The notes below the pieces were generated by a model that was not told the DNA's origin, made no database searches, and saw only the letters and a list, made by a program, of their open reading frames with translations. The position numbers and the translations under genes were made by a program. Shown here in pieces: positions 18,673 to 39,239 of a stretch of 58,450 bases of DNA. The first letter of the stretch is position 1; each line of letters begins with the position of its first letter. The DNA is from Hyphochytrium catenoides (lineage: Eukaryota; Protista; Hyphochytriomycota). The DNA is taken from positions 1 to 58,450 of the forward strand of contig FLMG01000057.1 in assembly GCA_900088475.1 (NCBI GenBank), given 5' to 3'.

Positions 18673-21600
18673 ATGTCGACCACCAAGATCGCGTGCCGTC
18701 GAGCTCTGGCTGCTGACCAGGCACACATAAACGCTCTCATTGGCGCGGATGCCTCCGTGCTCCGCCACCGTTATGGCAAATTCAACATTGCGCAACTGAT
18801 TGAAGTTCCCTTCCTGACAATTGTCGCATTGGACGGAGAGACAGGCCAGCTGCTTGGCTTCGCTGCCTTTGATGACAGTCATGTCCTCCCGGAATACACT
18901 GCAGAAGACTACTTCGAGTGGTCCAAGCGCGCCCATGGAGAGGATTTCAAGGTCTGTTCTTAAGACGTTTAAAGGACCATCTACCCATTCTTCTTGCCTC
19001 CTGCTGGTGTCTCTTTCTCTAATGTTGCAGAGACTTTCTCCTTGGCTTCTCTCCTTATCTCAAGAGTTCTTCATCCACCCCTCTCTCTCTGACACGGATT
19101 ATCTTCTTACTGCCGTTCTCCTTCTCACGCGCTCCGTATTCTCTGTCTCTGTTCTCTTTCTCTTCCTTTCTCTTCCTCTCTCAATCTACCCCAAGGCTCT
19201 AGAGACGCTATGGCTCTCTTTCTACGTAAGCGCGAAGAGTTACAATCTTGAGGTTCTCTCCACGATCCTCAAGGCTGTCTACGATACCATGCCTGACACA
19301 CAGCAGATCTTACTCTTGCTCCCTGTGGACGATGACCCGCAACTCTTCTCTGGTCTCTTCCATCTTTTGAAGAAGAGGGACGATGCCCCAGACTCGCCGC
19401 AGGCTTTCTCCTCTCTTCTTGCTCTAAAATGCCCTGCTGCGAGCTTCAGAGAAGATATTAAAGTGAGAGTGGCACGCGTAGAGGATCATGACGACCTGGT
19501 GCCTGTCTTCCAGAAGCAAAATCAAGTATGGGGATTTGGACCATATCCTGCTCTACGCTCTCTCTCTCTCTCTCTCCCCTATCCTCTCTCTCTCTCTCTC
19601 TCTGCGTGCGGCCCCAGTTAGGGCTTGGGTTGGTTTCCTTCTCATCTACTTCTTGGCTCATCGTTGTAGCGCCAGCATATGCTGACTCACATACTCTGGT
19701 TTTCTTGGGCGTCTAAAGCGGTAGTGCCTATAACTCTCTCTCCCTCGATTGTCCTTTGCCATCGCTGCTTCTCTTCCTTACGCGCTTTCATTGCTCTTTC
19801 TGACTCGTCTGTTGCCTGTGATCCCTCTACCCAGTCTATTAATGAGACGTATGGCGAGTACTTTCTGGCTGAGATGATCCAGGAGCAAAATGACGGGAAC
19901 AAGGCTGTGGTCGCCGAGGTCAAAGAGAGAGCCGTAGGACTTATGGCCTTCTCCTCCCAAATGGATGTCTCTCTCCTTCAGCAATGCTTCCAGCTGGAGC
20001 CCTATAATCACCTGATAAAAGGGAAGAGAAGCGTGAGCAGTGGAAGCGCTAAAGGGTCACGCGGCTCCCCACCGAAAATCATCATCGCAGGTGCTCCTGC
20101 GTCTGGCAAAGGCACACAGTGCGAACTAATAAGGGAGCACTTTGGAGTTGTCCATCTCTCANNNNNNNNNNNNNNNNNNNNNNNNNNNNNNNNNNNNNNN
20201 NNNNNNNNNNNNNNNNNNNNNNNNNNCTCTCTCTCTCCCTCTCTGTCTCTGTCTATGTCTCTCTCTTTCTCTCTCTCTGTCCACCTTCCTCACTCTCGGT
20301 CTGCTTAGCCCATTCTCTCTTCCGATGGGCGGTCTTATCTGCCGTATCACTTCACGCCCATCCGCATCTATCCCTTGTGCCATCAACAATATATATCACG
20401 TCAGGTTCATGGTTGAGATTGATCCTCCCTTCTTCATCCACTTTCAGTTAACTCTTCCCTTCCTCTACCGCTCGTAGGGGACATGCTACGTGCCGCTGCT
20501 GAGGAGGGGACTCCTGTGGGCCTAGAGGCTAAGAAATACATGGACGAGGGTAAGCTTGTTCCTGACGAGGTGATCATCGGCATCGTGAGAGAGAGAATGG
20601 AGAAGGAAGACTGTAAGGCGAGAGGATGGCTGCTGGACGGATTCCCTCGGACCAGAGCACAAGCAGACGCTCTTGATGCAGCTAATGTCAAGCCTGACAT
20701 CTTCATTTTGTTAGAGGTGAGGAGCAGGGCATCCTCCTCTCCAGCCTCTTCCTTTGTCTTTCCCGTCACTTAGCTATCTTAGGCCAGCCCCTCAAACTAA
20801 GCACATGCCGCGGCGCCCTCGCGATCAGCAACATTCATAAGCAAAGATTATTTGCTATCTCTTCTCATTGTTCTTCCCTCTTTGATGTTGCTCTCTGCTT
20901 TGTTCCTCTCAGTCTCAATTCTCTCTTTCTTGCAGGTCCCTGACGAGGACATTGTGGGCCGTGTAACGGGTCGTCGCACGGACCCAGTGACGAGCATCAT
21001 CTACCACTTGACCTTCAATCCTCCGCCTTCTGATGAGATCAAGAGCAGACTGGTTCAGCGTTCCGACGACACGGCTGAGAAGGTGAGAAAGGGAAGGTCT
21101 GATGGAAGGAGAAATTAATAAACTCCTGAAGGAGAATCATTCACCACGAGGGACATATATTCCTAGCTCATTCTGATGTCTTGTGAGGGTCATCTCGTGT
21201 TGCCTTCCTTGATCCCTTCTCTCTCTTTCTCTCTCCCTTCTCTATCTCTTTTTGTTCCTTCTCCCTCTCTCTCTCTCACTCTTTCTCTCTGTCTGTCTCT
21301 CCCTCTCTCTCTGTTTTAAATCGCAGGTGAAAGTCCGCCTAGGACAATATCATGCCAACGTCTCTTCTATCCTCTCCTGCTACGGAGGACAGCTTGAGAA
21401 AGTGGATGGGAGGAGGCCAAAAGTGGCGATCTTTGAAGACATTAGGCAGAGAATAGAGAAGAGGATCAGTCGAGAGCAACTGCTTCCTGCCTCTGCTTCT
21501 TCCCCTACTCGTCCCCTACGGATCATCATTGCTGGCGCCCCTGCCTCTGGGAAGGGCACCCAGTGTGAGCTCATCAGAGACAAGTACGGAGTGGTCCATC

Positions 21601-39239: not shown

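What the first reader, a model, noticed from the sequence alone, without database searches (positions are those of the whole stretch)
18673..39239. CFAP61 radial-spoke scaffold fused to a tandem array of eight adenylate kinase domains
Seen in sequence: both halves of CFAP61 flank eight AK repeats on one strand. Both fusion junctions lie within single exons (..[47 protein letters not shown].. and ..[32 protein letters not shown]..), so this is not two adjacent genes merged by annotation. The AK-to-AK linkers are also mostly read through within exons. Established knowledge: CFAP61/FAP61 belongs to the calmodulin- and spoke-associated complex at radial spoke 3 and normally has no kinase domain. 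As I recall, this insertion point is a variable low-complexity loop in animal orthologs. Axonemes use separate AKs (AK7/8/9, CPC1/SPEF2 AK-like domains) to recycle ADP. Inference: this lineage hard-wires a multi-site 2ADP<->ATP+AMP regenerating module onto each 96-nm axonemal repeat next to the inner dynein arms. It would be a Rosetta-stone fusion supporting RS3 as a nucleotide-metabolism hub. I cannot confirm whether this architecture has been described before.
Basis: partly seen in the sequence, partly recalled or inferred. Interest (0 to 1): 0.93.

Follow-up and report, generated by a model that had tools for sequence, protein, structure and literature searches.

The report
CFAP61 carrying eight adenylate kinase domains
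One large gene joins a scaffold protein of the flagellar radial spoke 3 (CFAP61) to eight ATP-regenerating adenylate kinase domains; smaller versions of the same fusion sit unremarked in all water-mould (oomycete) genomes, so the fusion is real but not unique, and it agrees with recent findings that this spoke is an ATP-handling hub.

Summary
On the + strand, 18673-39239 can be spliced with GT-AG introns only into one stop-free frame of about 3,077 codons. It reads: a complete CFAP61_N domain, eight adenylate kinase (AK) units, then the whole CFAP61 C-terminal half. Seven units keep every catalytic motif; unit 7 is degenerate. Both junctions and six of the seven AK-to-AK linkers lie inside single open exons. 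All six N-gaps fall in predicted CT/GA-rich introns. A DNA contig reads into gap 1 with the missing exon end and a GT donor.

The units match only in exons (70-86% DNA identity), so the array is old, not an assembly artefact. A second DNA sample differs at 21 synonymous and 4 conservative sites, which indicates purifying selection.

The fusion is not unique. Every oomycete CFAP61 found carries AKs at the same site: two in Peronosporales, Pythiales and Albugo, three or four in Saprolegniales. Animal orthologues and the one chrysophyte orthologue found have a low-complexity linker there instead. I found no paper describing the fusion.

The link between radial spoke 3 and AKs was shown experimentally in 2015-2025, so the fusion corroborates it rather than reveals it. 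No RNA run was listed, so a single mRNA remains unproven.

The parts
18673..39239 (+). Whole gene. The model has 45 exons and 44 GT-AG introns (60-450 nt, median about 260), gives about 3,077 codons, and has its only stop at 39237-39239.
   Evidence: Spliced protein-to-DNA alignments against oomycete orthologues and an AK unit. Assembly of the model and stop count. Collinear with P0010 and P0019 from the first Met to the last residues.
18673..19525 (+). CFAP61_N domain, first two exons (18673-18951 and 19196-19525). The intron between them holds an 84-nt length polymorphism.
   Evidence: Pfam PF16092 covers profile 2-73 (E 4.9e-5) and 86-201 (E 1.1e-14). Splice pair chosen. The indel joint 18995 to 19080 is seen in two DNA samples.
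19835..20161 (+). N-junction exon. It holds the end of CFAP61_N (profile 200-263 of 264), a 20-residue Ser/Gly/Lys-rich linker and the P-loop of AK1 in one open frame. The last 4 nt and the donor site are hidden in gap 1.
   Evidence: Pfam CFAP61_N at E 3.2e-20 and ADK positions 1-26 in the same piece. Aligns to human CFAP61 residues 207-265. A contig reads ACAG then GTACAC beyond 20161. Sample X2 has this exon in one contig with substitutions only.
20069..21458 (+). AK1, with all catalytic motifs intact.
   Evidence: Unit HMM score 371. Motifs shown in the alignment.
21513..23047 (+). AK2, intact.
   Evidence: The AK1-AK2 linker lies inside exon 21327-21609.
23138..24306 (+). AK3, intact.
   Evidence: Pfam ADK at E 4.8e-30 on the piece 22916-23560. 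Closest solved chains are long-type adenylate kinases: 5g3y at E 3e-28 and 1zak at E 3.5e-27.
24391..26100 (+). AK4, intact.
   Evidence: Pfam ADK at E 7.5e-22..
26149..28264 (+). AK5, intact, and split by the most introns (six exons).
28319..29903 (+). AK6, intact.
   Evidence: Its exon 28578-28731 is 86% identical in DNA to the AK3 exon 23234-23387, the closest pair of units.
30243..31813 (+). AK7, a degenerate pseudo-kinase. The P-loop GAPASGKGT is replaced by [10 protein letters not shown]. The lid Arg pair, the RxDD motif and the C-helix Arg are lost. The GELLR and [12 protein letters not shown] motifs are kept. The exon borders of this unit are the least certain in the model.
   Evidence: Pfam ADK only at E 6.4e-7, positions 16-71. 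Unit HMM score 97 against 358-378 for the others. 28-33% identity to the other units. Very long branch in the tree.
31886..33375 (+). AK8, intact, and the most divergent of the intact units (56-62% identity).
33055..33466 (+). C-junction exon. It holds the AK8 lid and C-terminal helix, a short linker, and then the CFAP61 continuation ([16 protein letters not shown]...) in one open frame.
   Evidence: ORF 33055-33618. Pfam ADK end and ADK_lid. Aligns to Chlamydomonas FAP61 residues 391-415 and to 9d2f_J residues 390-408. Aligns across the same junction in Saprolegnia and Plasmopara.
33669..39239 (+). CFAP61 C-terminal half: a second GNAT-like region, a Rossmann / Pyr_redox_2-like region ([29 protein letters not shown]...YAGG) and the CFAP61 dimerisation domain. 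About 850 residues in about 15 exons. Borders in the variable stretches are approximate.
   Evidence: Spliced alignments. blastp of the spliced C part: Pythium P0207 at E 6e-125, coral CFAP61 at E 3e-105, bat at E 3e-79. Faint Pfam CFAP61_dimer hit on the piece 37190-37846.
20162..20226 (.). Assembly gap 1, at the start of the intron after the AK1 P-loop exon. The other five gaps (22649-22707, 25467-25482, 26271-26296, 34018-34060, 38456-38593) lie inside predicted introns.

Best explanation
This is one protein-coding gene for a CFAP61 orthologue, the scaffold of the radial spoke 3 (RS3) base.

Shown here:
- The variable linker after the CFAP61_N domain is occupied by a tandem array of eight long-type adenylate kinase (AK) domains.
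- Seven of them keep the P-loop, the AMP-site Arg, GFPR, the lid GRRxD, the RxDD motif and the C-helix Arg. One is a dead domain.
- The array grew by old tandem duplications of genomic segments that already held introns.
- The insertion itself predates the split between this organism and the oomycetes.

Inferred, not shown:
- Because CFAP61 docks once per 96-nm repeat at the RS3 base, each repeat would carry seven tethered sites for 2 ADP <-> ATP + AMP. These would recycle ADP made by the neighbouring inner dynein arms and buffer the ATP/ADP ratio along the zoospore flagellum.
- The dead seventh unit most likely serves as a spacer or docking module.
For: Single gene:
- Both junctions, and six of seven inter-AK linkers, lie within single open exons. 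Separate genes would therefore have to start or stop in the middle of AK domains.
- The model gives one stop-free frame of 3,077 codons using GT-AG introns only.
- It is collinear from Met to stop with Saprolegnia and Plasmopara proteins of the same architecture.

Real and selected:
- The units share 70-86% DNA identity in exons only; the introns cannot be aligned.
- Depth over AK1-4 is about equal to depth over the single-copy CFAP61_N exons.
- Of 25 listed exonic differences to a second DNA sample, 21 are synonymous and 4 conservative.
- Seven units keep all catalytic motifs.

Conserved fusion:
- 43 fetched proteins have both CFAP61_N and AK. All the named ones are oomycetes.
- They carry 2 to 4 AKs at the same site.
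- About 120 animal CFAP61 and one chrysophyte CFAP61 have none.

Function:
- FAP251 pull-downs in Tetrahymena contain FAP61 and four AKs (PMC4395127).
- FAP61 knockout lowers axonemal AK activity, to about half of wild type after salt extraction, and removes AK7 and AK9. The mouse RS3 head holds five AK domains (bioRxiv 10.1101/2025.05.19.654877).
- The P. infestans FAP61 gene PITG_18373 is listed as induced in spore stages (supplement of PMC3471859).
Against: - No RNA run holding this gene was listed. Splicing, a single mRNA and expression are therefore unproven here.
- Exon borders in AK7 and in the variable parts of the C half are model-dependent.
- No contig bridges the gaps.
- The AK-unit tree does not place this gene's units with the oomycete CFAP61 units. 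They sit unresolved among free AKs. Common origin of the insert rests on the shared site, not on the tree.
- In mouse the RS3 AKs sit in the head while CFAP61 sits at the base, so the position of this array in the spoke is unknown.
- Catalysis is inferred from motifs only.
Confidence: 0.78

Rival explanations
1. The gene is as described, but the AK array is mainly structural. In this clade it would build the RS3 stalk, neck or head that AK7 and AK9 build in animals and ciliates. Catalysis would be secondary or partly silenced, as for two of the three AK9 domains in mouse.
For: In mouse RS3, AK7 and AK9 are load-bearing head and neck parts, and two AK9 sites are blocked by LRRC23. Eight units of about 25 kDa each come to a mass similar to AK9 plus two AK7. 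One unit here is already dead. P0368 carries a single AK that has lost the AMP-site Arg, the GFPR Arg and the lid.
Against: Seven units keep every catalytic residue under purifying selection, which a pure spacer would not need. The copy number varies from 1 to 8 between relatives, which is odd for a fixed structural part. Whether these genomes lack AK7, AK9 or LRRC23 was not tested.
Confidence: 0.13
2. The locus also, or mainly, yields a canonical CFAP61 through alternative splicing that skips the array, or yields separate AK transcripts from internal promoters. The 3,077-residue protein would then be a minor product.
For: There is no RNA evidence either way. The array sits in a linker that tolerates any length. 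NCBI lists two Saprolegnia diclina products, of 1966 and 1745 residues.
Against: The junction exons themselves contain AK sequence, so skipping would need cryptic sites inside them. All oomycete models keep AKs. Selection acts on the AK exons in the frame that continues from CFAP61.
Confidence: 0.06
3. It is an artefact or a dead locus: a misassembly at the N-gaps that joins CFAP61 to an unrelated AK cluster, or a decaying pseudogene.
For: There are six gaps and none is bridged by a contig. Unit 7 is degenerate.
Against: Both junctions lie in contiguous sequence away from any gap interior, and the N-junction exon is present in one contig of an independent sample. Orthologues share the same architecture. 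There are no stops in 3,077 codons. The synonymous to nonsynonymous count is 21 to 4.
Confidence: 0.03

Closest known systems
Oomycete CFAP61-AK fusion proteins, e.g. Plasmopara halstedii XP_024576623.1 (1737 aa, 'adenylate kinase'), Saprolegnia diclina XP_008617971.1 / XP_008617970.1, Aphanomyces astaci XP_009822825.1 (2036 aa), Phytophthora infestans XP_002997819.1
   Same: Same order of parts: CFAP61_N, then AKs, then the Pyr_redox_2-like region, then CFAP61_dimer. Same insertion point on both sides. Long-type AK with a lid. Collinear over the whole length.
   Different: They carry 2 AKs (Peronosporales, Pythiales, Albugo) or 3-4 (Saprolegniales), against 8 here. They share only about 30-33% identity in the CFAP61 parts. 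The oomycete loci fetched (L001, L002) have uninterrupted ORFs, while this gene has about 44 introns. Their AK units form their own clade (support 96/96), apart from this gene's units.
Canonical CFAP61 / FAP61 (human, mouse, Chlamydomonas, Tetrahymena), the RS3 base protein formerly counted in the calmodulin- and spoke-associated complex
   Same: The N domain, the Rossmann-like region and the dimerisation domain align end to end. The coral protein aligns at E 3e-105. Human residues 207-265 are about 58% identical to the last CFAP61_N exon.
   Different: Canonical proteins are 1,100-1,400 residues long. At the site where the AK array sits here, they have a 75 to over 200 residue Ser/Glu/Pro-rich linker and no kinase domain.
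AK9 and AK7, the adenylate kinases of the RS3 head in mouse and Tetrahymena
   Same: Several AK domains are held on RS3. Some domains are catalytically silent. Their presence depends on CFAP61: Tetrahymena FAP61 knockout loses them.
   Different: They are separate polypeptides located in the head and neck, with their own docking parts such as long helices. Here the AKs are covalently part of the base protein. Orthology to AK7 or AK9 was not tested. The closest solved chains to a unit here are free long-type adenylate kinases, 5g3y and 1zak.
Other tandem AK arrays in flagellates: Entophlyctis luteolus KAJ3202892.1 (8 ADK), Chromera velia Cvel_23040 (7 ADK stretches), Astrephomene GFR39846.1, Chlamydomonas FAP42
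   Same: Many AK domains in one chain in organisms with flagella.
   Different: None of those tested has CFAP61 parts.

Membership tests
CFAP61 (Pfam PF16092 + PF23150 architecture) | CFAP61_N domain complete | tested here: met
   Three exon pieces cover profile positions 2-73, 86-201 and 200-263 of 264. The E-values are 4.9e-5, 1.1e-14 and 3.2e-20, and two of the three pieces are above the gathering score on their own.
CFAP61 (Pfam PF16092 + PF23150 architecture) | C-terminal Rossmann / Pyr_redox_2-like region and CFAP61 dimerisation domain, collinear with orthologues | tested here: met
   The spliced C part (about 850 aa) aligns over about 870-960 columns with Pythium at E 6e-125, coral at E 3e-105 and bat at E 3e-79. 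Pfam on single exon pieces gave only a sub-threshold CFAP61_dimer hit at E 0.0024, because the exons are short.
CFAP61 (Pfam PF16092 + PF23150 architecture) | Location at the base of radial spoke 3, binding CFAP91 and CFAP251 | not testable with these tools
   Needs proteomics or cryo-ET of zoospore axonemes.
Adenylate kinase (PF00406), long type with lid | P-loop GxxGxGK(G/T)T, TGDxLR, GFPR(T/S)xxQA, lid GRRxD, RxDD and C-helix Arg | tested here: met
   All motifs are present in AK1-6 and AK8. Pfam ADK E-values go down to 4.8e-30 on exon pieces. Closest solved chains are 5g3y at E 3e-28 and 1zak at E 3.5e-27.
Adenylate kinase (PF00406), long type with lid | The same motifs in unit 7 | tested here: not met
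   The P-loop is replaced by [10 protein letters not shown]. The lid Arg pair, RxDD and the C-helix Arg are absent. The fold signature remains (Pfam ADK at E 6.4e-7).
Adenylate kinase (PF00406), long type with lid | Phosphotransfer activity 2 ADP <-> ATP + AMP | not testable with these tools
   Needs a recombinant enzyme assay.
CFAP61-AK fusion subfamily of oomycetes | AK domains inserted between CFAP61_N (equivalent to human residue ~265) and the '...AF.I.LFC.DE.Y' segment (human ~389) | tested here: met
   One alignment runs across both junctions in Saprolegnia and Plasmopara. The site is defined against human, Chlamydomonas and 9d2f chains and against animal linkers.
CFAP61-AK fusion subfamily of oomycetes | AK units orthologous to the oomycete units (single origin of the insert) | tested here: inconclusive
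   Oomycete units form a clade with support 96/96. The window's units fall outside it, in an unresolved group with free AKs and a metagenomic two-AK protein. Concerted evolution or independent capture cannot be told apart.
AK9 / AK7 (RS3 head kinases) | Orthology to AK9 or AK7, including their docking parts | not tested

The most novel reading that the evidence does not exclude
In oomycetes and their relatives, the adenylate kinases of radial spoke 3 are supplied by CFAP61 itself instead of by separate AK7 and AK9 proteins. The spoke's distal part would then be built from, or replaced by, a variable-length chain of AK domains (1 to 8 per lineage). That would make RS3 size and ATP-buffering capacity an evolvable copy-number trait, one that could be tested by cryo-ET in Phytophthora or Saprolegnia zoospores.
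Probability: 0.15. Interest if true: 0.75.

Novelty: new variant of a known kind. Interest (0 to 1): 0.55.

Why it matters
The fusion is natural, independent evidence that adenylate kinases and CFAP61 work together on radial spoke 3, a link that had so far been shown only in Tetrahymena and mouse. It shows that another eukaryotic group solved AK docking by covalent insertion into the spoke's base protein. It also shows that AK dose per axonemal repeat varies between relatives from one to eight.

Oomycete zoospores are the infective stage of major crop and fish pathogens and swim for hours on stored energy. A spoke-anchored ATP-regenerating array is therefore a plausible contributor to swimming endurance. 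It can be tested by ordinary knock-out or domain deletion in transformable Phytophthora or Saprolegnia species.

For annotation, dozens of database entries called simply 'adenylate kinase' are in fact CFAP61 orthologues.

Tried and rejected
- RNA support. The repeat listed none. The first search (kind 'any') gave DNA runs only, so I used the single read-laying run on DNA contigs.
- The window's own predicted protein. It did not appear in the 1.84-billion-protein library (best hit 52% identity), so I had to build the gene model myself.
- Pfam on C-terminal exon pieces gave nothing, or one faint hit, because the exons are short. I replaced this test with alignment of the spliced model.
- A whole-protein search with coral CFAP61 returned animals only among the 120 listed and told little about protists. 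The Pythium C-terminal search was more useful.
- Contig L001 (5,428 nt, holding a full 1,742-residue fusion ORF with short flanks) looked like an mRNA. It has no poly(A) tail and a second gene is called on the other strand at its end, so it cannot be counted as transcript evidence.
- Metagenomic two-AK proteins most similar to the units (P0011, P0187 and others) match only in their AK part and show no CFAP61 part.
- The mini-exon 20405-20411 that my aligner placed to bridge gap 1 is an artefact. The contig end shows the real exon end.
- The joint 19166 to 24253 (one X1 contig, 21 letters on the shorter side) is most likely a CT-repeat mis-join, not a deletion allele.
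Full report
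**Observation**

The + strand between 18673 and 39239 is dense with short open pieces separated by CT/GA-rich stretches. This is the look of an intron-rich eukaryotic gene.

Pfam scans of stop-free pieces give CFAP61_N in three consecutive pieces, covering profile positions 2-73, 86-201 and 200-263 of 264. In the third piece (19670-20161), the start of an adenylate kinase (ADK) domain follows in the same open frame, 20 residues after the end of CFAP61_N.

The piece 33055-33615 holds the ADK lid and end, then runs on into sequence that matches Chlamydomonas FAP61 residues 391-415 and another solved CFAP61 chain at residues 390-408. The last CFAP61_N exon matches human CFAP61 residues 207-265.

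tblastn with one AK unit finds eight units in order, and Pfam confirms ADK in their pieces.

**Gene model**

I wrote a small protein-to-genome spliced aligner that allows GT-AG introns in all three phases. I ran it with oomycete orthologues and with a concatenated AK unit as templates.

- The array from 20478 to 33466 translates in one frame without a stop.
- With three N-terminal exons and about fifteen C-terminal ones, the model has 45 exons and 3,077 codons. Its only stop is at 39237-39239.
- Six of the seven AK-to-AK linkers lie within single exons that hold the C-helix of one unit and the P-loop of the next. Together with the two junction exons, this chains CFAP61_N, AK1 to AK8 and the rest of CFAP61 independently of any splice prediction. 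Separate genes would have to begin and end inside kinase domains.
- Exon borders are uncertain in unit 7 and in the variable stretches of the C half.

**Gaps**

All six N-runs lie between consecutive exons, in CT/GA repeats.

Gap 1 touches the exon end '...VVHLS'. In the other units this exon ends '...HLSTG' followed by GT. A contig of DNA run X1 continues past 20161 with ACAG and then GTACAC, exactly the missing letters and a donor. The orthologue alignment runs uninterrupted across gap 6. No contig bridges a gap, since the contigs break at the CT repeats. The count is therefore 'at least eight'.

**Is the array real?**

- Self-comparison shows 70-86% DNA identity between units, restricted to exons. 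The introns share only simple repeats.
- The units are 56-72% identical as proteins.
- Assembler depth over AK1-4 equals that over the single-copy CFAP61_N exons in two samples. The tool warns that this depth is a flat, per-contig figure.
- Several intron positions recur in different units: after HLSTG, after KER, after LLLE and after EEK. The duplications were therefore genomic and old.
- Sample X2, which differs by about 1%, carries the N-junction exon in one contig with substitutions only.
- Of the 25 listed exonic differences, 21 are synonymous and 4 conservative, and 22 lie at third codon positions. This is clear purifying selection in my reading frame across CFAP61_N and AK1-4.

**Catalytic state**

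AK1-6 and AK8 keep GAPASGKGT, TGDx[17 protein letters not shown](T/S)xxQA, GRRxDPxTG, RxDD and the C-helix Arg. Their closest solved relatives are free long-type adenylate kinases, 5g3y and 1zak.

AK7 aligns without gaps over its N half. However, it has [10 protein letters not shown] in place of the P-loop and has lost the lid Arg pair, RxDD and the C-helix Arg.

**Relatives**

A search of 1.84 billion representatives with one AK unit put multi-AK proteins on top. Pfam showed that several combine CFAP61_N, two to four ADK, Pyr_redox_2 and CFAP61_dimer. They come from Lagenidium, Saprolegnia, Phytophthora, Plasmopara, Albugo, Globisporangium and Aphanomyces.

Targeted searches then showed that every oomycete CFAP61 retrieved carries ADK:

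- Two units in Peronosporales, Pythiales and Albugo.
- Three or four units in Saprolegniales.
- Three long models (Lagenidium and two Globisporangium entries) are two tandem copies merged into one.
- One protein from an unidentified organism (Logan run SRR1810206) has a single, degenerate AK at the same site.

About 120 animal CFAP61, a picozoan, an ichthyosporean and the chrysophyte Chlorochromonas danica have none.

The window's gene is collinear with the Saprolegnia and Plasmopara proteins across both junctions. Its C half is closest to oomycetes.

In a tree of AK units, the oomycete units form one clade (support 96/96). The window's units lie outside it, unresolved with free AKs. Lineage-specific expansion is therefore clear, but a single origin of the insert rests on the shared site alone.

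**Meaning**

CFAP61 sits at the RS3 base. Published work links it to AKs in several ways:

- Pull-downs of its partner FAP251 contain FAP61 and four AKs, and the authors proposed that RS3 controls local ATP (PMC4395127).
- In 2025 the mouse RS3 head was shown to consist of AK9 (three AK domains), two AK7 and two LRRC23.
- Tetrahymena FAP61 knockouts lose AK7 and AK9, and their axonemal AK activity falls, to about half of wild type after salt extraction (bioRxiv 10.1101/2025.05.19.654877; PMC12399478).

The fusion is thus a 'Rosetta stone' that agrees with an established association. It is not the first evidence for it.

The most likely working is a spoke-anchored chain of seven active sites that turns dynein-made ADP back into ATP once per 96-nm repeat. 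This is inference. Position in the spoke, activity and expression were not tested.

A structural role, possibly replacing AK7 and AK9, is the main rival and the most novel reading left open.

**Prior description**

No paper in the searched library holds both CFAP61 and Phytophthora. The papers on CFAP61/FAP61 and adenylate kinases that I opened do not mention a fusion, and neither do the titles and abstracts listed. The oomycete flagellar gene catalogue lists FAP61 (PITG_18373, induced in spore stages) as uncharacterised and lists adenylate kinases separately.

The architecture is visible in public databases under automatic names. I therefore rate the finding a new variant of a known kind: the largest known member of an undescribed but already deposited CFAP61-AK fusion family.

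**Limits**

- No RNA evidence was obtained.
- The gaps are unbridged.
- Some exon borders are approximate.
- Orthology of the units to AK7 or AK9 was not tested.
- Whether these genomes contain AK7, AK9 or LRRC23 was not tested.

Noticed in passing
window 18996-19079 (intron 1 of the model): An 84-nt stretch is skipped in one contig each of DNA runs X1 (depth 91 of about 290) and X2 (20 of about 32). This looks like a length polymorphism or second haplotype inside the first intron. It argued against two small exons that my aligner had first placed there.
   Followed up: partly
window 16544-17458 (+): The open frame just upstream of the gene reads like the C-terminal part of a 4-hydroxyphenylpyruvate dioxygenase. 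This is my recognition of the sequence only; it was not searched.
   Followed up: no
P0001 (Lagenidium giganteum DAZ99118.1), P0205 (UniRef K3WJG2), P0167 (Globisporangium splendens): These 2,100-2,700-residue database models each hold four AK domains in two pairs, the spacing expected of two tandem CFAP61-AK copies run together. A second CFAP61_N was confirmed only in P0001. They are either a real tandem duplication of the gene or merged gene models.
   Followed up: partly
L002 827-4852 (Logan run SRR1810206), protein P0368: A CFAP61 of 1,341 residues from an unidentified organism has a single AK at the same insertion site. That AK has lost the AMP-site Arg, the GFPR Arg and the lid. It may be an early or decayed stage of the fusion.
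   Followed up: partly
P0002 (Entophlyctis luteolus KAJ3202892.1), P0063 (Chromera velia Cvel_23040), P0124 (2,709 aa): Other flagellates have long tandem AK arrays without CFAP61: 8 ADK in a chytrid and 7 in Chromera. One 2,709-residue protein joins PH, ankyrin, an arginine/creatine-kinase-type domain, two ADK and a PDZ domain.
   Followed up: no
window 20000-33500: Intron positions recur between AK units (after HLSTG in units 1, 2, 5, 6, 8; after KER in 3, 6, 8; after LLLE in 1, 2, 4, 6, 8). Units 3 and 4 have lost the first of these and unit 5 has gained several. This is a compact natural series for studying intron loss and gain after tandem duplication.
   Followed up: partly
window 23234-23387 versus 28578-28731: The AK3 and AK6 exons for GD(M/I)[43 protein letters not shown] are 86% identical in DNA and 96% in protein, well above the array average. 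This may be a gene-conversion tract.
   Followed up: no
supplement of PMC3471859: The 2012 Phytophthora infestans flagellar catalogue lists FAP61 as PITG_18373 and an adenylate kinase as PITG_18377, only four gene numbers apart. I could not check whether either model corresponds to the 1,679-residue fusion protein XP_002997819.1.
   Followed up: no
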